Shown here piece after piece: positions 1,300-17,955 of a DNA stretch of 17,955 bases. This DNA comes from Octopus sinensis. Lineage: Eukaryota. The DNA lies in NCBI RefSeq assembly GCF_006345805.1, contig NW_021824718.1, positions 1-17,955 on the forward strand, written 5' to 3'. Below the pieces are notes generated by a model, which made no database searches, was not told the DNA's origin, and worked only from the letters and a program-made list of their open reading frames with translations. Numbering within the stretch: the stretch's first letter is position 1; each line of letters opens with the position of its first letter. The translations under genes and the position numbers were made by a program.

Positions 1300-2930
1300 A
1301 GCATTTAGTTCGGTAAGTAGCGACGTGTACGTTTTCAAACAGTTCTTTACACAACATGTGCTGTAGAATAATTTGGTACTATTTAAAATATATGAATATA
1401 TACAGAGAAAGTAATCGATGAAGCGTTGTTAAAAATTAATTCAATCATTGCGCATGGCAAGAAAAAGCTATATGCAAGAGCATCAAATGATATTGCTAAG
1501 ATGAGATACAGCGGTCATCTACTGCAATGATATAGTTTCCACATACTTAAAATTATTTTTCAAGTAACGAGCGAACGAGGTGGGTTCTACACAGGAGCAG
1601 GACTTACTAACAGAGGAACCCTATCGTTCTTGAACTGATAAAGATTTTAGTTTAAAAATCTTGGGCATTCTATTTCACTGAGCTCTTTCATAGATTTATG
1701 CAAAGAAATATTCATTTTTATTTAAAAAAATTGTTTCCTGGTATCAATACGAGTTTATATTTGTTACAGTTGACGTCAGTAAATTCTTTTCTACTCTAGG
1801 CACAAGGTCCGAAATTTTGGGGGAGGGGGCCAGTCGATTAGATCGACCCCAGTACTTGACTGGCACTTAATTTATCGACCCCGAACGGATGAAAGGCAAA
1901 GTCGATCTCGGCGGAATTTGAACTCAGAACGTAAAGACAGATGAAATACCTATTTCTTTATTACCCACAAGGGACTAAACACAGAGGGGACAAACAAGGA
2001 CAGGCAAACGGATTAAGTCGATTACATCGACCTCAGTGCGTAACTGGTACTTAATTTATCGACCCCGAAAGGATGAAAGGCAAAGTCGATCTCGGCGGAA
2101 TATGAACTCAGAACGTAAAGACAGACGAAATACCTATTTCTTTACTAACACAGAGGGGACAAACAAGGACAGGCAAACGGATTAAGTCGATTACATCGAC
2201 TCCAGTGCGTAACTGGTACTTAATCTATCGACCCCGAAAGGACGAGAGGCAAAGTCGACCTCGGTGGAATTTGAACTCAGAACGTAACGGCAGACGAAAT
2301 ACGACTACGTATTTCGCTCGGCGTGCTAACGATTCTGCCAGCTCCCCGCCTTAAAGACATCAATAAAATACAACCACTGATCAGCAACACCCAACAAATT
2401 TAAAAGCGTTCTGGAATCAAAATGATTGGTTGACGTTGGATTAATCTTATAATTTGTAGAAACGTTTTTAGTGATATTTCTGGAGAAAGTTGATTTGCAA
2501 ATATTTTCCAACATTTATAATTTCAGAAGTATAAACAGAAACGGTAAAAAGCGCCCTCTCGCAGTGGACAAAATTTAGCTTTGTGATTGATTCCTGAAGT
2601 TGAAAGCCTTCAATAATAAAAGAAATTTGAAAATCATATGCTGATAAAATATATAAAATTTGGAATTTATAAGAATTTTCTGGACAAATTAGATTTCGTA
2701 ATTGCCTTTCTTCTCTTTTTACTAAAAGTCACATTTTCTCCTCAAATTAGTAAGTAGGTTTCTTTATCAAAGTATAGACATCAGTTTCTTTAAATTTTTA
2801 ATATTAAATTCCGAAAGCAGATCAAAAGCAATTTGAGTTTTTACGTCATTTCCGCTGTTTATGATATATTCCACCTGGTTTGGCAATGTATATACAACCA
2901 TTAAATGCATGGCGAGCAAGTATAATTTAT
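1300..2930 (-). pseudogene. Decayed Penelope-like element (PLE) reverse transcriptase remnant, interrupted by the SINE at 1784-2352
   Basis: Collinear minus-strand motifs, translated by hand: ETDVYTLIKKPT (starts 2788), HKAKFCPLR (2585-2559), VSVYTSEIINVGKYLQINFLQ (2542-2480), LYFIDV (2373-2356); beyond the SINE and in a single frame: TNI (1764-1756), YLKNNFKYVETISLQ*MTAV (1566-1507), QRFIDYFLCIY (1428-1396). The order matches PLE RT motifs (Y..L..DPT, HK..PLRP, DV.SLYTNI, NN.F, RF/YIDD). Many stops and frameshifts; spacings fit only approximately. Confidence 0.5.
1784..2352 (-). mobile_element. tRNA-derived SINE family A (Meta-SINE-like body), internally triplicated
   Basis: One head (AGGCGGGGAGCTGGCAGAATCGTTAGC, 2352 downward) followed by three copies of the body GAGTTCA(A/T)ATTCC(G/A)CCGAG(A/G)TCGACTTTGCC...GGGGTCGATA(A/G)ATTAAGT(A/G)CCAG with periods of 184 and 169 bp. 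Ends CCTAGAGTAGAAAAGAA. Same family at 5185-5507 and 8581-8783. Confidence 0.9.
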
Positions 2931-4388: not shown

Positions 4389-4540
4389 GGTTGTGTGGTA
4401 AGTAGCTTGCTTGCCAACCACATGGCTCTGGGTTCAGTCCCACTGTGTGGCAGCTTGGGCAAGGGCCATCTACTATGGCCTTGGGTCGACCAAAGCCTTG
4501 TGAGTGAATTTAGTAGATGGAAACTGAAAGAAGCCCGTCG
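4389..4540 (+). mobile_element. tRNA-derived CORE-like SINE family B, head + CORE only
   Basis: GGTTGTGTGGTAAGTAGC (A box region), GGGTTCAGTCCC (B box region), CTTGGGCAAG (CORE-like), ending GGAAACTGAAAGAAGCCCGTCG then TA/TG repeats; paralogous to 10749-10905. Confidence 0.88.
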
Positions 4541-4689
4541 TATATATGTGTCGTATGTATGTGTGTGCCAGTTCAGTTGTTTGGCCTCATGTTAGCCTTG
4601 GTGGAGCAGACCTTTGATCGAAGACAATCAGCCGTGACTATTCCTTCTTTTGATGCAGTACAGTTTATATACTGTCTTATCCTTTATAT

Positions 4690-7364: not shown

Positions 7365-7565
7365 TCGATAGATAGATAGTTAGATAGACAGATAGAGAGG
7401 CAGACAGGCAAACAGACAGCCAGATAGGTAGATAGATAGATAGATAGACAGATAGGCAGACAGTCAGATAGATAGATAGATAGACAGATAGATAGACAGA
7501 TAGATAGTTAGATAGATAGATGACAGACAGACAGACACGCAGTCAGTAAGATAGACAGATAGATA
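7365..7565. repeat. (GATA)/(GACA)n compound microsatellite
   Basis: Direct reading of the sequence. Confidence 0.95.
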
Positions 7566-7597
7566 AATATACAATTATTCAATTTCCCTTCTTCATT

Positions 7598-8520
7598 GAA
7601 CCTTTCCAAGGAGTCCTCCCTCTCATCGGAACTTTCCAGGAAGTACTCATCCACCTAGGAACTTTCCAGTAAATCATCCCTCTCCTCCCCGTCATTGGAA
7701 CTTTACAGAAAATACTCCCCCTCATCGGAGGTATCCAGGAAGTCCCCCCTCTTCCCATTCCTTGGAATTTCCAGGAGGTCACACCCTCCTCCTCTCCACC
7801 ATACATTGGTACTTTTCAGGAGGTCATCCCCTCCTCGGAACTATTCAGGAAGCCATTCCCCTCCATCCCTTCCGTCCGTGCCTGGAACTCTCTAGTAAGT
7901 GCTTTCCTCCGCGGGACTTTGCAGGAAGTCCTCCGCCTCATCGGAACTTTCCAGGACTTTTTACCCCTCCCATTTCTTGAAGCTTTCCAAGAAGTCCTCC
8001 CACTCCTCGGAACTTTCCAGGAAGTACTCATCCACCTAGGAACTTTCTAGGAAGTCATCCCTCTCATCCCCTGCCTCCATTTCCTCGGAACTTTCCAGGA
8101 AGTCCTCCACTTCCTACCTTTCCTTGTAAATCTCCAGAAAGAACGCCCCCTCTTTGGAATTTCTTGGAAGTCCTTCCTCGCTTCCCATTCCTTGGTACGT
8201 TCGAGGACGACATCCCCCTCTCCTACCTCCCCTTCCTTGGAACTTTCCAGGAAGCTATCCAAAACCTAGGAACTTTCCCTGAAGTCACCCCACCTCCACT
8301 TCCTCCACTTCCTTTGAACATTCTAGGAAGTTACGAACCTCCTCCCCTTCCTTCCCCCTAGACACTTTCCAGGAAGTCATCGTCATTTCGCCTTCCTTAG
8401 AACTTTACAGGTAATCTCCCTGCTCTTCGGAACATTCCAGGAAGTCCTCCTCTTCACCCTTGGAACTTTCCAGGAAATACTCCCACGTTTCCCATTCTTG
8501 GGACTTTCTAGGACGTCACC
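7598..8520. repeat. Minisatellite of 26 units, core GGAACTTTCCAGGAAGT, C-rich spacers, period 29-48 bp
   Basis: Core starts counted at 7598, 7628, 7658, 7697, 7727, 7764, 7808, 7837, 7884, 7913, 7943, 7978, 8009, 8039, 8087, 8125, 8156, 8194, 8239, 8269, 8315, 8360, 8399, 8429, 8462, 8500. Confidence 0.95.
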
Positions 8521-8580
8521 CCTCGACCTCTTCCTTATTATTATTATCATTATTATTATTATTGACATTTAATATATATT

Positions 8581-8783
8581 TCTTTACTGCCCACAAGGGG
8601 CTAAACATAGAGGGGACAAACAAGGGACTAAGTCGATTACATCGACCCCAGTGCGAAACTGGTACTTTATTTATCGACCCCGAAAGAATGAAAGGCAAAG
8701 TCGACCTCGGCGGAATTTGAACTCACAACGTAACGACAGACGAAATACCGCTAAGCATTTCGCCCGGCGCGCTAACGTTTCTG
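8581..8783 (-). mobile_element. SINE family A, single copy missing about 12 nt of its 5' end
   Basis: CAGAAACGTTAGCGCGCCGGGCGAAATGCTTAGCGG...GAGTTCAAATTCCGCCGAGGTCGACTTTGCC...GGGGTCGATAAATAAAGTACCAG; its tail matches the linker between units at 1950-2020. Confidence 0.9.
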
Positions 8784-8802
8784 ATCATATAGTGATCGTC
8801 AT

Positions 8803-10748: not shown

Positions 10749-10984
10749 GCGCAGGCTGTGTGGTAAGAAGCTTGCTTACCAACCACATGGTTCCGGGTTC
10801 AGTTCTACTGCATAGTACCTTGGGCAAGTGTCTTCTACTGGGGCCTCGGGCTGACCAAAACCTTGTGAGTGGATTTGGTCTGCGGAAACTGAAAGAAGCC
10901 CACCGCATGTATATATATATATATATTTGTATAAATGTGTGTGCGTGTCTGTCTCCCCCACCATCGTTTGACAGCCGATGTTTG
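10749..10984 (+). mobile_element. SINE family B: head + CORE + TA/TG + start of the 3' module (truncated)
   Basis: GCGCAGGCTGTGTGGTAAG, CCGGGTTCAGTTC, CCTTGGGCAAGTGTCTTC, GGAAACTGAAAGAAGCCC, then CCCCCACCATCGTTTGACAGCCGATG. Confidence 0.88.
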
Positions 10985-12913: not shown

Positions 12914-13104
12914 TTCTTTTATTTGTTTCTGTCATTTGACTGTGGCCATGCTGGATCACCACCTTTAGTCGAACAAATCGAACCCAGGACTTATTCTTTG
13001 TAAGCCTAATACTTATTCTATCAGTCTCTTTTGCCGAACCGCTAAGTTACGAGGACGTAGATATACCGACATCGGTTGTGAAGCGTTGGTGAGGGACAAA
13101 CATA

Positions 13105-13147
<43 letters not shown>

Positions 13148-13816: not shown

Positions 13817-14064
13817 ATCACCGTGATCACCGTGACCGACCAGGCTATCAAATGTTGTTACACATCGCTGGTCACAATGGGTTCGCATTGTTTTAGCCTT
13901 CGAATAACGCCACCCCGATGGCTAAGCGAGCAAGCCAACAGAAGAAAGAGTGGTACTTTTAGGTGTTTTCGCTCAATAAACACACAAAACGCCCGGTCTG
14001 GAATCGAAACCGCGATCCTGCAACCGCGAGTCCGCTGCCCTAACCACTATGCCATTGCGCCTCC
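13817..14064 (-). mobile_element. SINE family C head with internal deletion and an alternative 3' tail
   Basis: Head at 13961-14064 (GGAGGCGCAATGGCATAGTGGTTAGGG...). GAAGAAAGAGTG is shared with 3389-3400, but the distal tail (13817-13945) differs from 3194-3385. Confidence 0.8.
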
Positions 14065-14242: not shown

Positions 14243-14460
14243 GGAGGCGCAATGGCCCAGTGGTTAGGGCAGCGGACTTGCGGTCGGAGGATCGCGTTTC
14301 GATTCCCAGACCGGGCGTTGTGTGTGTTTATTGAGCGAAAACACCTAAAAGCTCCACGAGCTCTTTTAGGGGATGGTGGTGATCCCTGCTGTACTCTTTC
14401 CACCACTCTAAAGGCGGTGGCTCCAGCATGGCCGCAGTCAAATGACTGAAACAAGTACAG
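14243..14460 (+). mobile_element. Chimeric SINE: family C 5' part (14243-14408) fused to the family B 3' terminus (14409-14460)
   Basis: GGAGGCGCAATGGCCCAGTGG...CCCTGCTGTACTCTTTCCACCAC directly followed by TAAAGGCGGTGGCTCCAGCATGGCCGCAGTCAAATGACTGAAACAAG, the reverse complement of 12925-12970. Confidence 0.85.
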
Positions 14461-15226: not shown

Positions 15227-15522
15227 TGCTGGGGCACCGCCTTGAAGGATTTCTTTTAGTCGAATGAATTGACCACATTACATTTTTGAAAGCCTCGTAC
15301 GTATTCTATCGATTCTTCGGCCGAACCGCTAAGTTGCGGGGACATAAACGCACCAACGTCAGTTGCTAAGCAGTGTTGGTGGACAAACATACACACACAC
15401 ACACACACACAGAGGCTTCTTTCAGTTTCCGCCCACCAAATTCACTCACAAGACGTTGACCCGCAGTGGGATTGAACCCAGAACCGTGTGGCTGGTAAGC
15501 AAGTTACTTATCAAACAGCCAC
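15227..15522 (-). mobile_element. SINE family B composite copy, with a ~45-nt deletion in CORE and both ends trimmed
   Basis: GTGGCTGTTTGATAAG...GGGTTCAATCCC head, GGAAACTGAAAGAAGCC, short (TG)n, 3' module GCCGAACCGCTAAGTT...GCACCGCCTT. Confidence 0.82.
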
Positions 15523-17239: not shown

Positions 17240-17955
17240 ATCGTCTCTTCTTTCTCCCTTCCTCCTCTTCCTTCTCTCCCTCTTCCTCCTTCCTTTCTTC
17301 CTTCCTCCACTTCTTCCTCTCCCTCTCTATCCTCTCCTTCCTCCTTTTCTTCCTCTCCTTCATCATTCCCTTCTGCCTCCTCTTCTCCTTTTCCTCCTTT
17401 CTTTCTCCTTTTCCTCCTTCCTTTCCTTCTCCTCCCCTTTCCTCTCTCCTCCCCATTCTTCTCTTCCATCTCTCTCCTCTTCCTCCTTCCTTCCTCCACC
17501 TCTTCCTCCCCTCTCTATCCTCTCCTTCCTCCCTTTCTTCCTCGCCTTCATCATTCCCTTCTGCCTCCTCTTCTCCTTTTCCTCCTTTCTTTCTCCTTTT
17601 CCTCCTTCCTTTCCTTCTCCTCCCCTTTCCTCCTCCTCCCCATTCTTCCTCTTCCATCTCTCTCCTCTTCCTCCTTCCTTCCTCCACCTCTTCCTCTCCC
17701 TCTCTATCCTCTCCTTCCTCCCTTTCTTCCTCGCCTTCATCATTCCCTTCTGCCTCCTCTTCTCCTTTTCCTCCTTTCTTTCTCATCTTCTTCCTTCGTT
17801 TTCCCCTCCCCCCTTTCCTCCTCCTCCTCCCCATTCCTCCTCTTCCATCTCTCTCCTCTTCCTCCCAGTCTTTCCTCCTTTTTCCTTCTCTCTTCTTCCT
17901 ATCTTCCTTCGCTATTCTCCTTCATCCCTCATTCAGTTCTCTCCGCTCTCCATCC
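17240..17955. repeat. Polypyrimidine/polypurine satellite, about 3.5 units of 188-189 bp
   Basis: CATCATTCCCTTCTGCCTCC anchors at 17361, 17549, 17738; the plus strand is almost entirely C/T. Confidence 0.92.

What the first reader, a model, noticed from the sequence alone, without database searches (positions are those of the whole stretch)
7598..8520. Minisatellite whose core overlaps Rel/NF-kB-like, STAT and ETS sites, repeated 26 times
Seen: core GGAACTTTCCAGGAAGT. GGAACTTTCC is intact in 8 units. TTCN3GAA occurs in 12 units (7 TTCCAGGAA, 2 TTCTAGGAA, plus TTCTTGGAA, TTCCAAGAA, TTCCCTGAA). The core is better conserved than the C-rich spacers, and a block at 7614-7669 recurs 381 bp later (higher-order duplication). 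Known: TTCN3GAA is the STAT GAS element, GGAACTTTCC is one base from the classic kB site GGGACTTTCC, and (C/A)GGAAGT is the ETS core. Inferred: a homotypic cluster that could act as a signal-responsive enhancer or factor sponge; several variant cores still satisfy the GAS spacing. The core is also a near-palindrome and the minus strand is G-rich, so structural or recombination explanations are equally open.
Basis: partly seen in the sequence, partly recalled or inferred. Interest (0 to 1): 0.7.

Follow-up and report, generated by a model that had tools for sequence, protein, structure and literature searches.

The report
Decaying minisatellite with GGAA-type core
This is an ordinary, old, non-coding tandem repeat (26 units of about 30 bp) that grew by unequal exchange and is decaying at random; it resembles STAT, NF-kB and ETS binding sites because its core is made of alternating GGAA and TTCC, and nothing shows it was kept for that purpose.

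Summary
There are 26 units at 7598-8532. GGAACTTTCC is intact 8 times and TTCN3GAA occurs 12 times with the stated variants. The 381-bp recurrence is real.

The regulatory reading fails the one test the sequence allows:
- The 65 core substitutions are spread evenly over the 17 positions (chi-square p=0.80).
- TTCN3GAA survives in 12 units against 10.2 expected (P=0.25). The kB-like 10-mer and AGGAAGT are also at expectation.
- Between paralogous units, cores have changed at least as fast as spacers.
- The strict kB consensus GGGRNNYYCC is not met by the core.

There is no G3+ quadruplex motif, no hairpin beyond shuffles and no coding frame.

The array is about 2.3 copies of an 11-12-unit higher-order block, with a more recent 95-bp exchange tract at 92% identity. 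I read it as a neutrally decaying minisatellite shaped by unequal exchange and 3-bp slippage in its C/T-rich spacers. It lies between a (GATA)n tract and a SINE tail.

I could not test whether other copies exist in the host genome, because a positive control showed the databases do not hold that genome. Binding was not testable either.

The parts
7598..8532 (+). Degenerate minisatellite. 26 units of a 17-nt core (GGAACTTTCCAGGAAGT) plus a C/T-rich spacer of 12-31 nt. The consensus 30-mer is GGAACTTTCCAGGAAGTCCTCCCCCTCATC.
7598..7978 (+). Higher-order block A (units 1-11).
   Evidence: It aligns unit-for-unit with block B and mirrors its spacer-length pattern. Permutation P<5e-5 for all 11 pairs and 0.007 without the first three.
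7979..8428 (+). Higher-order block B (units 12-23). It holds one more unit than block A: unit 4 of A looks like a fusion of units 15 and 16.
8429..8532 (+). Units 24-26, apparently a partial third block. Units 25-26 resemble units 4-6 and 16-18.
   Evidence: families D10, D11, D12; by eye
7596..7690 (+). Young exchange or conversion tract. It is 92% identical to 7977-8071, while the rest of the two blocks is about 70-77% identical.
   Evidence: D5; (first 3 pairs: 8 mismatches in 99 columns; other 8 pairs: 59 in 266)
7977..8071 (+). Partner of the young exchange tract, 381 bp downstream.
   Evidence: D5; D10
7367..7565 (+). Left flank: a (GATA/GACA)n microsatellite. It is not part of the array.
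8535..8795 (-). Right flank: a SINE-like element on the minus strand. Its (TAA)n tail, read as (TTA)n 8535-8563 on the + strand, abuts the last spacer of the array. Three other copies of the same family lie at 1794-2302.
   Evidence: D8. The orientation is inferred from the B-box-like GAGTTCAAATTCC motif.

Best explanation
This is a non-coding, neutrally decaying minisatellite. Its proposed history has five steps.

1. A roughly 30-bp unit (a 17-nt GGAA/TTCC-based core plus a 13-nt C-rich spacer) was amplified head-to-tail.
2. The units diverged by point substitution everywhere. The polypyrimidine spacers also changed length by slippage, often in 3-bp steps.
3. An already-diverged block of 11-12 units (about 380-450 bp) was duplicated by unequal exchange, giving about 2.3 higher-order copies.
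4. A later exchange or conversion re-homogenised the first 95 bp of the two blocks.
5. Decay continued. A SINE now abuts the 3' end.

The matches to STAT-GAS, kB-like and ETS motifs follow from the core's composition: GGAA-c-TTTCC-a-GGAA-gt. Each motif re-uses the same three tetramers, so they are not separate features kept by selection.

Shown here: the anatomy, the block structure, the uniform substitution pattern, and the absence of structure and coding signals. Inferred: the order of events and neutrality.
For: - Units and periods.
- Block structure: blocks A and B align unit-for-unit. Spacer lengths are 13,13,22,13,19,28,12,30 in A against 13,13,31,[22],12,22,28,13,29 in B.
- Paralogous spacers are 0.67 identical against 0.52 for random pairs (P<5e-5). 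The result still holds without the first three pairs (0.605 against 0.508, P=0.007).
- The 65 core substitutions are uniform across the 17 positions (chi-square p=0.80). Retention is at expectation for GAS (12 against 10.2, P=0.25), the kB-like 10-mer (8 against 5.9, P=0.13) and AGGAAGT (9 against 8.8, P=0.56).
- Between paralogous units the core has 43 mismatches in 186 columns and the spacer 24 in 179 (Fisher p=0.02, in the direction opposite to core constraint). Spacers differ mainly by indels: 29 gap events against 2.
- 18 of 26 periods are multiples of 3, as expected from slippage in CCT-like spacers.
- No G3+ G4 motif on either strand, and DNA folding is no better than shuffles.
- Stops occur in all six frames and there is no Pfam match.
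- No Rfam or tRNA hit.
- The window is packed with microsatellites and SINE-like copies, with no long ORF or RNA-family hit that points to a gene.
Against: - Redundant homotypic site clusters can function with very weak constraint on each site. Uniform decay therefore lowers the case for binding or enhancer activity but does not exclude it.
- With 26 non-independent units, the tests would only detect strong constraint.
- The spacer alignments contain gaps and are low-complexity, which flatters spacer identity.
- I could not examine the host genome, an orthologous locus, population variation or chromatin data.
- 13 TTCN3GAA in under 1 kb is a dense target for any GGAA-reading factor, whatever its origin.
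Confidence: 0.74

Rival explanations
1. The array is a homotypic transcription-factor binding cluster. It would act as a signal-responsive enhancer, or as a sponge, for STAT, Rel or ETS factors that read the GGAA/TTCC core.
For: - 13 TTCN3GAA lie in or at the edge of the array, against 5.1 expected for the whole window.
- 9 [CA]GGAAGT and 8 GGAACTTTCC are present.
- There is precedent that minisatellites can carry functional factor sites. The HRAS1 minisatellite binds rel/NF-kB proteins (Trepicchio & Krontiris 1992, PMC312374, cited in PMC8096271). GGAA microsatellites act as EWS-FLI1 enhancers (PMC6075149).
Against: - There is no positional constraint. Substitutions are uniform (p=0.80), and motif survival is at the level expected from random hits.
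- Cores diverged at least as fast as spacers after the block duplication.
- The strict kB consensus is not met by the core.
- The three motifs overlap and share tetramers, so their co-occurrence is one coincidence rather than three.
- The motif density follows automatically from repeating one unit.
Confidence: 0.09
2. The array is the internal tandem-repeat region of a dispersed mobile element or multi-copy repeat family. If so, its sequence reflects that element's history and not this locus.
For: - The window is dense in SINE-like and other dispersed repeats.
- From general knowledge, internal minisatellites are common in transposons such as SVA and Helitron/Helentron-type elements in molluscs. 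This was not tested here.
- Genome-wide copy number could not be measured.
Against: - There is no second copy or fragment of the unit anywhere else in the 18-kb window. The only matches are low-complexity C/T hits with E>=0.37.
- No terminal inverted or long direct repeats bracket the array.
- The flanks are a microsatellite and an independently inserted SINE.
- No related array was found in the viral, prokaryotic-genome or metagenome collections.
Confidence: 0.12
3. The array is a structure-forming element (hairpin or cruciform, G-quadruplex or i-motif, or triplex) that acts as a recombination or replication-pausing hotspot.
For: - Strand asymmetry is strong (C 36%, G 15% on the + strand).
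- Pyrimidine runs reach 22 nt.
- The core is near-palindromic.
- The block duplication shows that unequal exchange did happen.
Against: - No (G3+N1-7)x4 motif on either strand. Only weak two-G runs are present.
- Single-strand DNA folding energies are indistinguishable from dinucleotide shuffles, with z from -0.54 to +1.16.
- Only one pyrimidine tract exceeds 14 nt.
- Unequal exchange needs only tandem homology, not a special structure.
Confidence: 0.03
4. The array is a live or recently dead coding repeat, that is, an exon encoding a proline-rich 10-residue repeat.
For: - The consensus 30-mer is open in 5 of 6 frames.
- The + frames have only 4-7 stops per 311 codons, against about 9 expected, with open runs of 125-126 codons.
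- 18 of 26 periods are multiples of 3.
Against: - No single frame stands out, and every frame has stops. Eight units shift the frame.
- No Pfam family matches.
- A full HMMER scan of 1.84 billion proteins gave only one weak hit, a translated 62-bp tandem repeat from a barn swallow contig. That repeat is not significantly similar at the DNA level.
Confidence: 0.01

Closest known systems
Classical non-coding minisatellite (VNTR-type tandem repeat) with higher-order structure
   Same: - Head-to-tail units of about 30 bp in an array of about 0.9 kb.
- Strand-asymmetric base composition and variable unit length.
- Block duplications of the kind unequal exchange produces.
- Decay by random substitution.
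   Different: Copy-number polymorphism, which defines a VNTR, could not be checked. The units are already about 25% diverged from each other, so the array looks old and not actively homogenised, apart from one 95-bp tract.
Human HRAS1 minisatellite, whose 28-bp units bind rel/NF-kB family proteins (Trepicchio & Krontiris 1992, PMC312374; cited in PMC8096271)
   Same: A minisatellite with a unit of about 30 bp that contains a kB-like sequence.
   Different: Binding was demonstrated experimentally for HRAS1 and nothing of the kind is known here. The core misses the strict kB consensus. No neighbouring gene was identified. There is no sequence relationship.
GGAA microsatellites used as neo-enhancers by EWS-FLI1 (e.g. 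PMC6075149)
   Same: Repeated GGAA cores create dense ETS-type targets purely by repetition, without having evolved for that purpose.
   Different: Those are pure 4-bp repeats bound by an oncogenic fusion protein in human tumours. This is a 30-bp unit with one ETS-like core per unit, in an invertebrate-looking genome, and no binding data exist.
62-bp tandem repeat in a Hirundo rustica contig, annotated as hypothetical protein RMC22975.1 (L004 1974-2922)
   Same: A C-rich spacer plus a GGGAATTCCTGGAAG core, containing TTCCTGGAA. It is open in several frames and so was called as a protein.
   Different: Its unit is twice as long, its copies are 92% alike (a young array), and the host is a bird. 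DNA similarity to the window's array is at chance level (E>=0.06 against 1 kb). It is a convergent look-alike and not a relative.

Membership tests
Minisatellite | Tandem head-to-tail units of about 10-100 bp | tested here: met
   26 units with periods of 29-48 bp. TRF detects parts of the array with periods 30 and 69.
Minisatellite | Non-coding | tested here: met
   Stops in all six frames, frame-shifting unit lengths and no Pfam match.
Minisatellite | Copy-number variation between individuals (VNTR) | not testable with these tools
   No second individual or host assembly was available. Exact-protein look-ups found no other contig.
Higher-order repeat | Units at a fixed multi-unit offset are more alike than neighbouring units | tested here: met
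   Pairs at an offset of 11-12 units have spacer identity 0.67 against a null of 0.52 (P<5e-5). Without the young tract the values are 0.605 against 0.508 (P=0.007).
STAT-responsive GAS cluster | TTCN3GAA present in multiple copies | tested here: met
   12 in units plus 1 at the left edge.
STAT-responsive GAS cluster | Half-sites preserved beyond neutral expectation | tested here: not met
   12 observed against 10.2 expected (P=0.25). TTC/GAA positions average 22.7 of 26 conserved, against 22.3 of 26 for the N3 positions.
STAT-responsive GAS cluster | STAT occupancy or signal-dependent activity | not testable with these tools
   No chromatin or binding data.
kB enhancer | Match to GGGRNNYYCC | tested here: not met
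   One match in the window (7738-7747, minus strand, across a core/spacer junction), with 0.96 expected. The core GGAACTTTCC lacks the third G.
Transposon-internal tandem repeat | Terminal repeats or other element parts flank the array, with dispersed copies | tested here: inconclusive
   There are no bracketing repeats and no other copy in the 18 kb. The host genome could not be searched, and the SINE positive control shows the protein databases lack it.
G-quadruplex-forming minisatellite (CEB1/CEB25 type) | Four or more runs of G3+ within a unit | tested here: not met
   Zero G3+ motifs on either strand.

The most novel reading that the evidence does not exclude
The array is a lineage-specific repeat-born enhancer or factor sink. 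In this reading, 13 GAS-spaced TTC/GAA sites and 9 ETS cores recruit the host's STAT, ETS or Rel proteins cooperatively. Redundancy among the 26 units hides per-site constraint, and copy number tunes a nearby gene.
Probability: 0.06. Interest if true: 0.5.

Novelty: new member of a known kind. Interest (0 to 1): 0.12.

Why it matters
As it stands it matters little. It is one more degenerate minisatellite in a repeat-dense, apparently non-coding stretch.

Its use is as a caution. A repeat unit built from GGAA and TTCC tetramers will automatically match STAT, NF-kB-like, ETS and similar motifs many times over, and motif density inside a tandem array is not evidence of regulatory function.

If the array were shown to be bound and active, it would be an invertebrate example of a repeat-born enhancer. 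That is an interesting result but not an unprecedented one.

Tried and rejected
1. Other arrays in public collections. A two-core pattern (25 specified bases) found nothing in prokaryotic genome contigs. In viral and metagenome contigs it found only 11-12-nt GGAACTTT(T)CCA iterons of small circular elements, which have a different architecture.

2. Translated-ORF route to other arrays. The search for homologous proteins with the TSWKVP-frame ORF found nothing. A positive control using an ORF from the window's multi-copy SINE also found nothing. The database therefore does not hold this host's ORFs, and the negative result says nothing about copy number.

3. Exact-protein look-ups to identify the source contig found nothing on record.

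4. A full HMMER scan of 1.84 billion representatives gave one hit at E=4.5e-5. It is a translated bird tandem repeat, rejected as chance or convergent at the DNA level.

5. Rfam and tRNA scans of the window found nothing.

6. A literature search for the core string gave 0 papers. Searches on cephalopod repeats found nothing about such a repeat.

7. G4, i-motif and hairpin ideas were rejected.

8. The coding-repeat idea was rejected.

9. The host organism was not established. The microsatellite density and the SINE suggest a cephalopod-like invertebrate genome, but that rests on my recollection and was not tested.

Full report
**Observation**

The region 7598-8532 is a tandem array. Periods run 29-48 bp, and 30 bp is the commonest. 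With up to 3 mismatches the core matches 20 times, all on the + strand inside the array, against 0.03 expected from dinucleotide shuffles.

- GGAACTTTCC is intact in 8 units.
- TTCN3GAA occurs in 12 units, as 7 TTCCAGGAA, 2 TTCTAGGAA and one each of TTCTTGGAA, TTCCAAGAA and TTCCCTGAA.
- AGGAAGT occurs 9 times.

A 13th TTCN3GAA sits at the left edge. Only one lies elsewhere in the window, against 5.1 expected window-wide. The reported 381-bp recurrence is real and longer than stated: 7596-7690 matches 7977-8071 at 92% (D5).

**Surroundings**

The window has no convincing gene. Its ORFs are translated microsatellites, and there is no Rfam or tRNA hit. It is saturated with micro- and minisatellites and with several dispersed SINE-like families.

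The array is bounded on the left by a (GATA/GACA)n tract (7367-7565). On the right, (TTA)n 8535-8563 runs into a SINE-like copy (to about 8795). That copy belongs to the family present three times at 1794-2302. Its B-box-like motif reads on the minus strand, so I infer that the (TTA)n is the SINE's tail abutting the last spacer.

No repeat brackets the array. No other copy of its unit exists in the window, where the only matches are chance-level C/T low-complexity hits. The host was not identified. A cephalopod-like genome is my guess from memory, not a result.

**Internal anatomy**

A global alignment of 7598-7978 against 7979-8428 pairs the units one-to-one: 1-11 with 12-23. Unit 4 looks like a fusion of units 15 and 16.

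The spacer-length series is mirrored: 13,13,22,13,19,28,12,30 against 13,13,31,[22],12,22,28,13,29. Private variants are also shared. Units 9 and 21 share TCTAG, and units 5 and 17 share the spacer CTTCCCATTCCTT.

Paralogous spacers are 0.67 identical against 0.52 for random unit pairs (P<5e-5). The signal survives removal of the first three pairs (0.605 against 0.508, P=0.007). Units 24-26 look like a partial third block (D10-D12).

So the array is about 2.3 copies of an 11-12-unit higher-order block. The first 95 bp of the blocks are much more alike (92%) than the rest (about 70-77%). This points to a later exchange or conversion event.

Eighteen of the 26 periods are multiples of 3. Spacers differ mainly by indels, with 29 gap events against 2 in the cores. 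That is what slippage in CCT-like polypyrimidine tracts produces.

**Test of the regulatory reading**

They do not.
- The 65 core substitutions are spread evenly over the 17 positions (chi-square p=0.80).
- The TTC/GAA positions are conserved in 22.7 of 26 units on average. The figure is 22.3 for the N3 positions and 21.75 for the rest.
- I redistributed each unit's substitutions at random. Expected survivors were 10.2 TTCN3GAA (observed 12, P=0.25), 5.9 GGAACTTTCC (observed 8, P=0.13) and 8.8 AGGAAGT (observed 9, P=0.56).

The claim that the core is better conserved than the spacers holds only across all units: 87% against 69% in the 30-bp units. Between paralogous units the picture reverses. 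That comparison measures change since the block duplication and does not depend on anchoring the alignment on the core. Cores show 43 mismatches in 186 columns and spacers 24 in 179 (Fisher p=0.02, opposite to core constraint). Gapped low-complexity alignments flatter the spacers, so I read this only as no evidence that cores evolve more slowly.

The strict kB consensus GGGRNNYYCC has one match in the whole window. It lies across a core/spacer junction, at chance level.

The three motif classes are also not independent. The kB-like site uses GGAA(1)+TTCC(2), the GAS site uses TTCC(2)+GGAA(3), and the ETS site uses GGAA(3). That these factor families all read GGAA-type cores is established knowledge and was not tested here.

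**Structural and coding rivals**

- No (G3+N1-7)x4 motif exists on either strand.
- Single-stranded DNA folds of array segments and of a consensus trimer are no more stable than shuffles, with z from -0.54 to +1.16.
- Only one pyrimidine run exceeds 14 nt.
- The consensus unit is open in five of six frames. This explains why the + frames have few stops (4-7 against about 9 expected) and open runs of about 125 codons. Every frame has stops, eight units shift the frame, and there is no Pfam match.

**Relatives elsewhere**

Pattern scans of the viral, prokaryotic-genome and metagenome collections found nothing related. They returned only unrelated 11-12-nt GGAACTTT(T)CCA iterons in small circular contigs.

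Searching translated ORFs found nothing. A positive control with an ORF from the window's multi-copy SINE also found nothing. These databases therefore do not contain the host genome, and the negative results say nothing about copy number. Exact look-ups failed as well.

A full HMMER scan of 1.84 billion representatives returned one protein at E=4.5e-5. It is a hypothetical protein of Hirundo rustica, and it is simply a translated 62-bp tandem repeat with core GGGAATTCCTGGAAG and a C-rich spacer. At the DNA level it is not significantly similar to this array. I treat it as a convergent look-alike. It also illustrates how such repeats get annotated as proteins.

**Comparison with known cases**

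The closest kind is an ordinary non-coding minisatellite with higher-order structure. A second precedent is GGAA microsatellites acting as EWS-FLI1 enhancers (PMC6075149). Those cases rest on binding experiments, and no such experiment exists for this array. The literature search found no mention of this core.

**Verdict**

The regulatory interpretation is not supported by the only sequence-level test available, though binding itself remains untested. The recombination history is supported, and the structural and coding readings are rejected.

The best explanation is a neutrally decaying minisatellite shaped by unequal exchange and spacer slippage (confidence about 0.74). The main open question is whether the unit is unique to this locus or belongs to a dispersed family, and answering it needs the host assembly. 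Interest is low.

Noticed in passing
window 1794-2302 and 8565-8795: A SINE-like family has four copies. Three lie head-to-tail at 1794-1949, 1978-2133 and 2147-2302 (76-94% identical). One lies next to the array on the minus strand with a (TAA)n tail. A head-to-tail SINE trimer is unusual for independent insertions and suggests local tandem duplication.
   Followed up: partly
window 17280-17885: A C/T-rich 188-bp higher-order repeat is present in 3.1 copies, with two copies 94% alike. It is built from CTCCTCTTC-type subunits of about 9-12 nt. It has the same polypyrimidine flavour as the minisatellite's spacers but no significant similarity to them (E>=0.37).
   Followed up: partly
window 13950-14064 / 14243-14357; 4389-4547 / 10754-10912; 13027-13124 / 15314-15411: Further dispersed repeat families are present. 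One is an 88%-complementary inverted pair separated by an (AT)n tract. Two are direct pairs at 80-81% identity, and each copy of one of these pairs is followed by (AC)n. They are probably other SINE or MITE-like elements.
   Followed up: no
L001 1-120 and 5025-5141; L003 4270-4395; L002 1739-1800: Small viral or metagenome contigs of about 5 kb, one with terminal redundancy, carry 8-10 tandem 11-12-nt GGAACTTT(T)CCA iterons next to an ORF start. They look like replication-origin iterons of a small circular replicon. They are unrelated to the window.
   Followed up: no
L004 1974-2922 (Hirundo rustica contig QRBI01000003.1): A 62-bp tandem repeat (15 copies, 92% alike) is annotated as hypothetical protein RMC22975.1. 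Its neighbours are a (GGAT)n tract of about 1 kb and an 82/165-bp satellite. The protein is a translated repeat, so the annotation is an artefact.
   Followed up: partly
window 7598-8532: CpG observed/expected is 0.48 inside the array against 0.85 for the whole window. The spacer/core junction reads TCGG in 8 units and TTGG in 7 more (TAGG in 3). This is consistent with CpG decay, and possibly with methylation of this stretch.
   Followed up: partly
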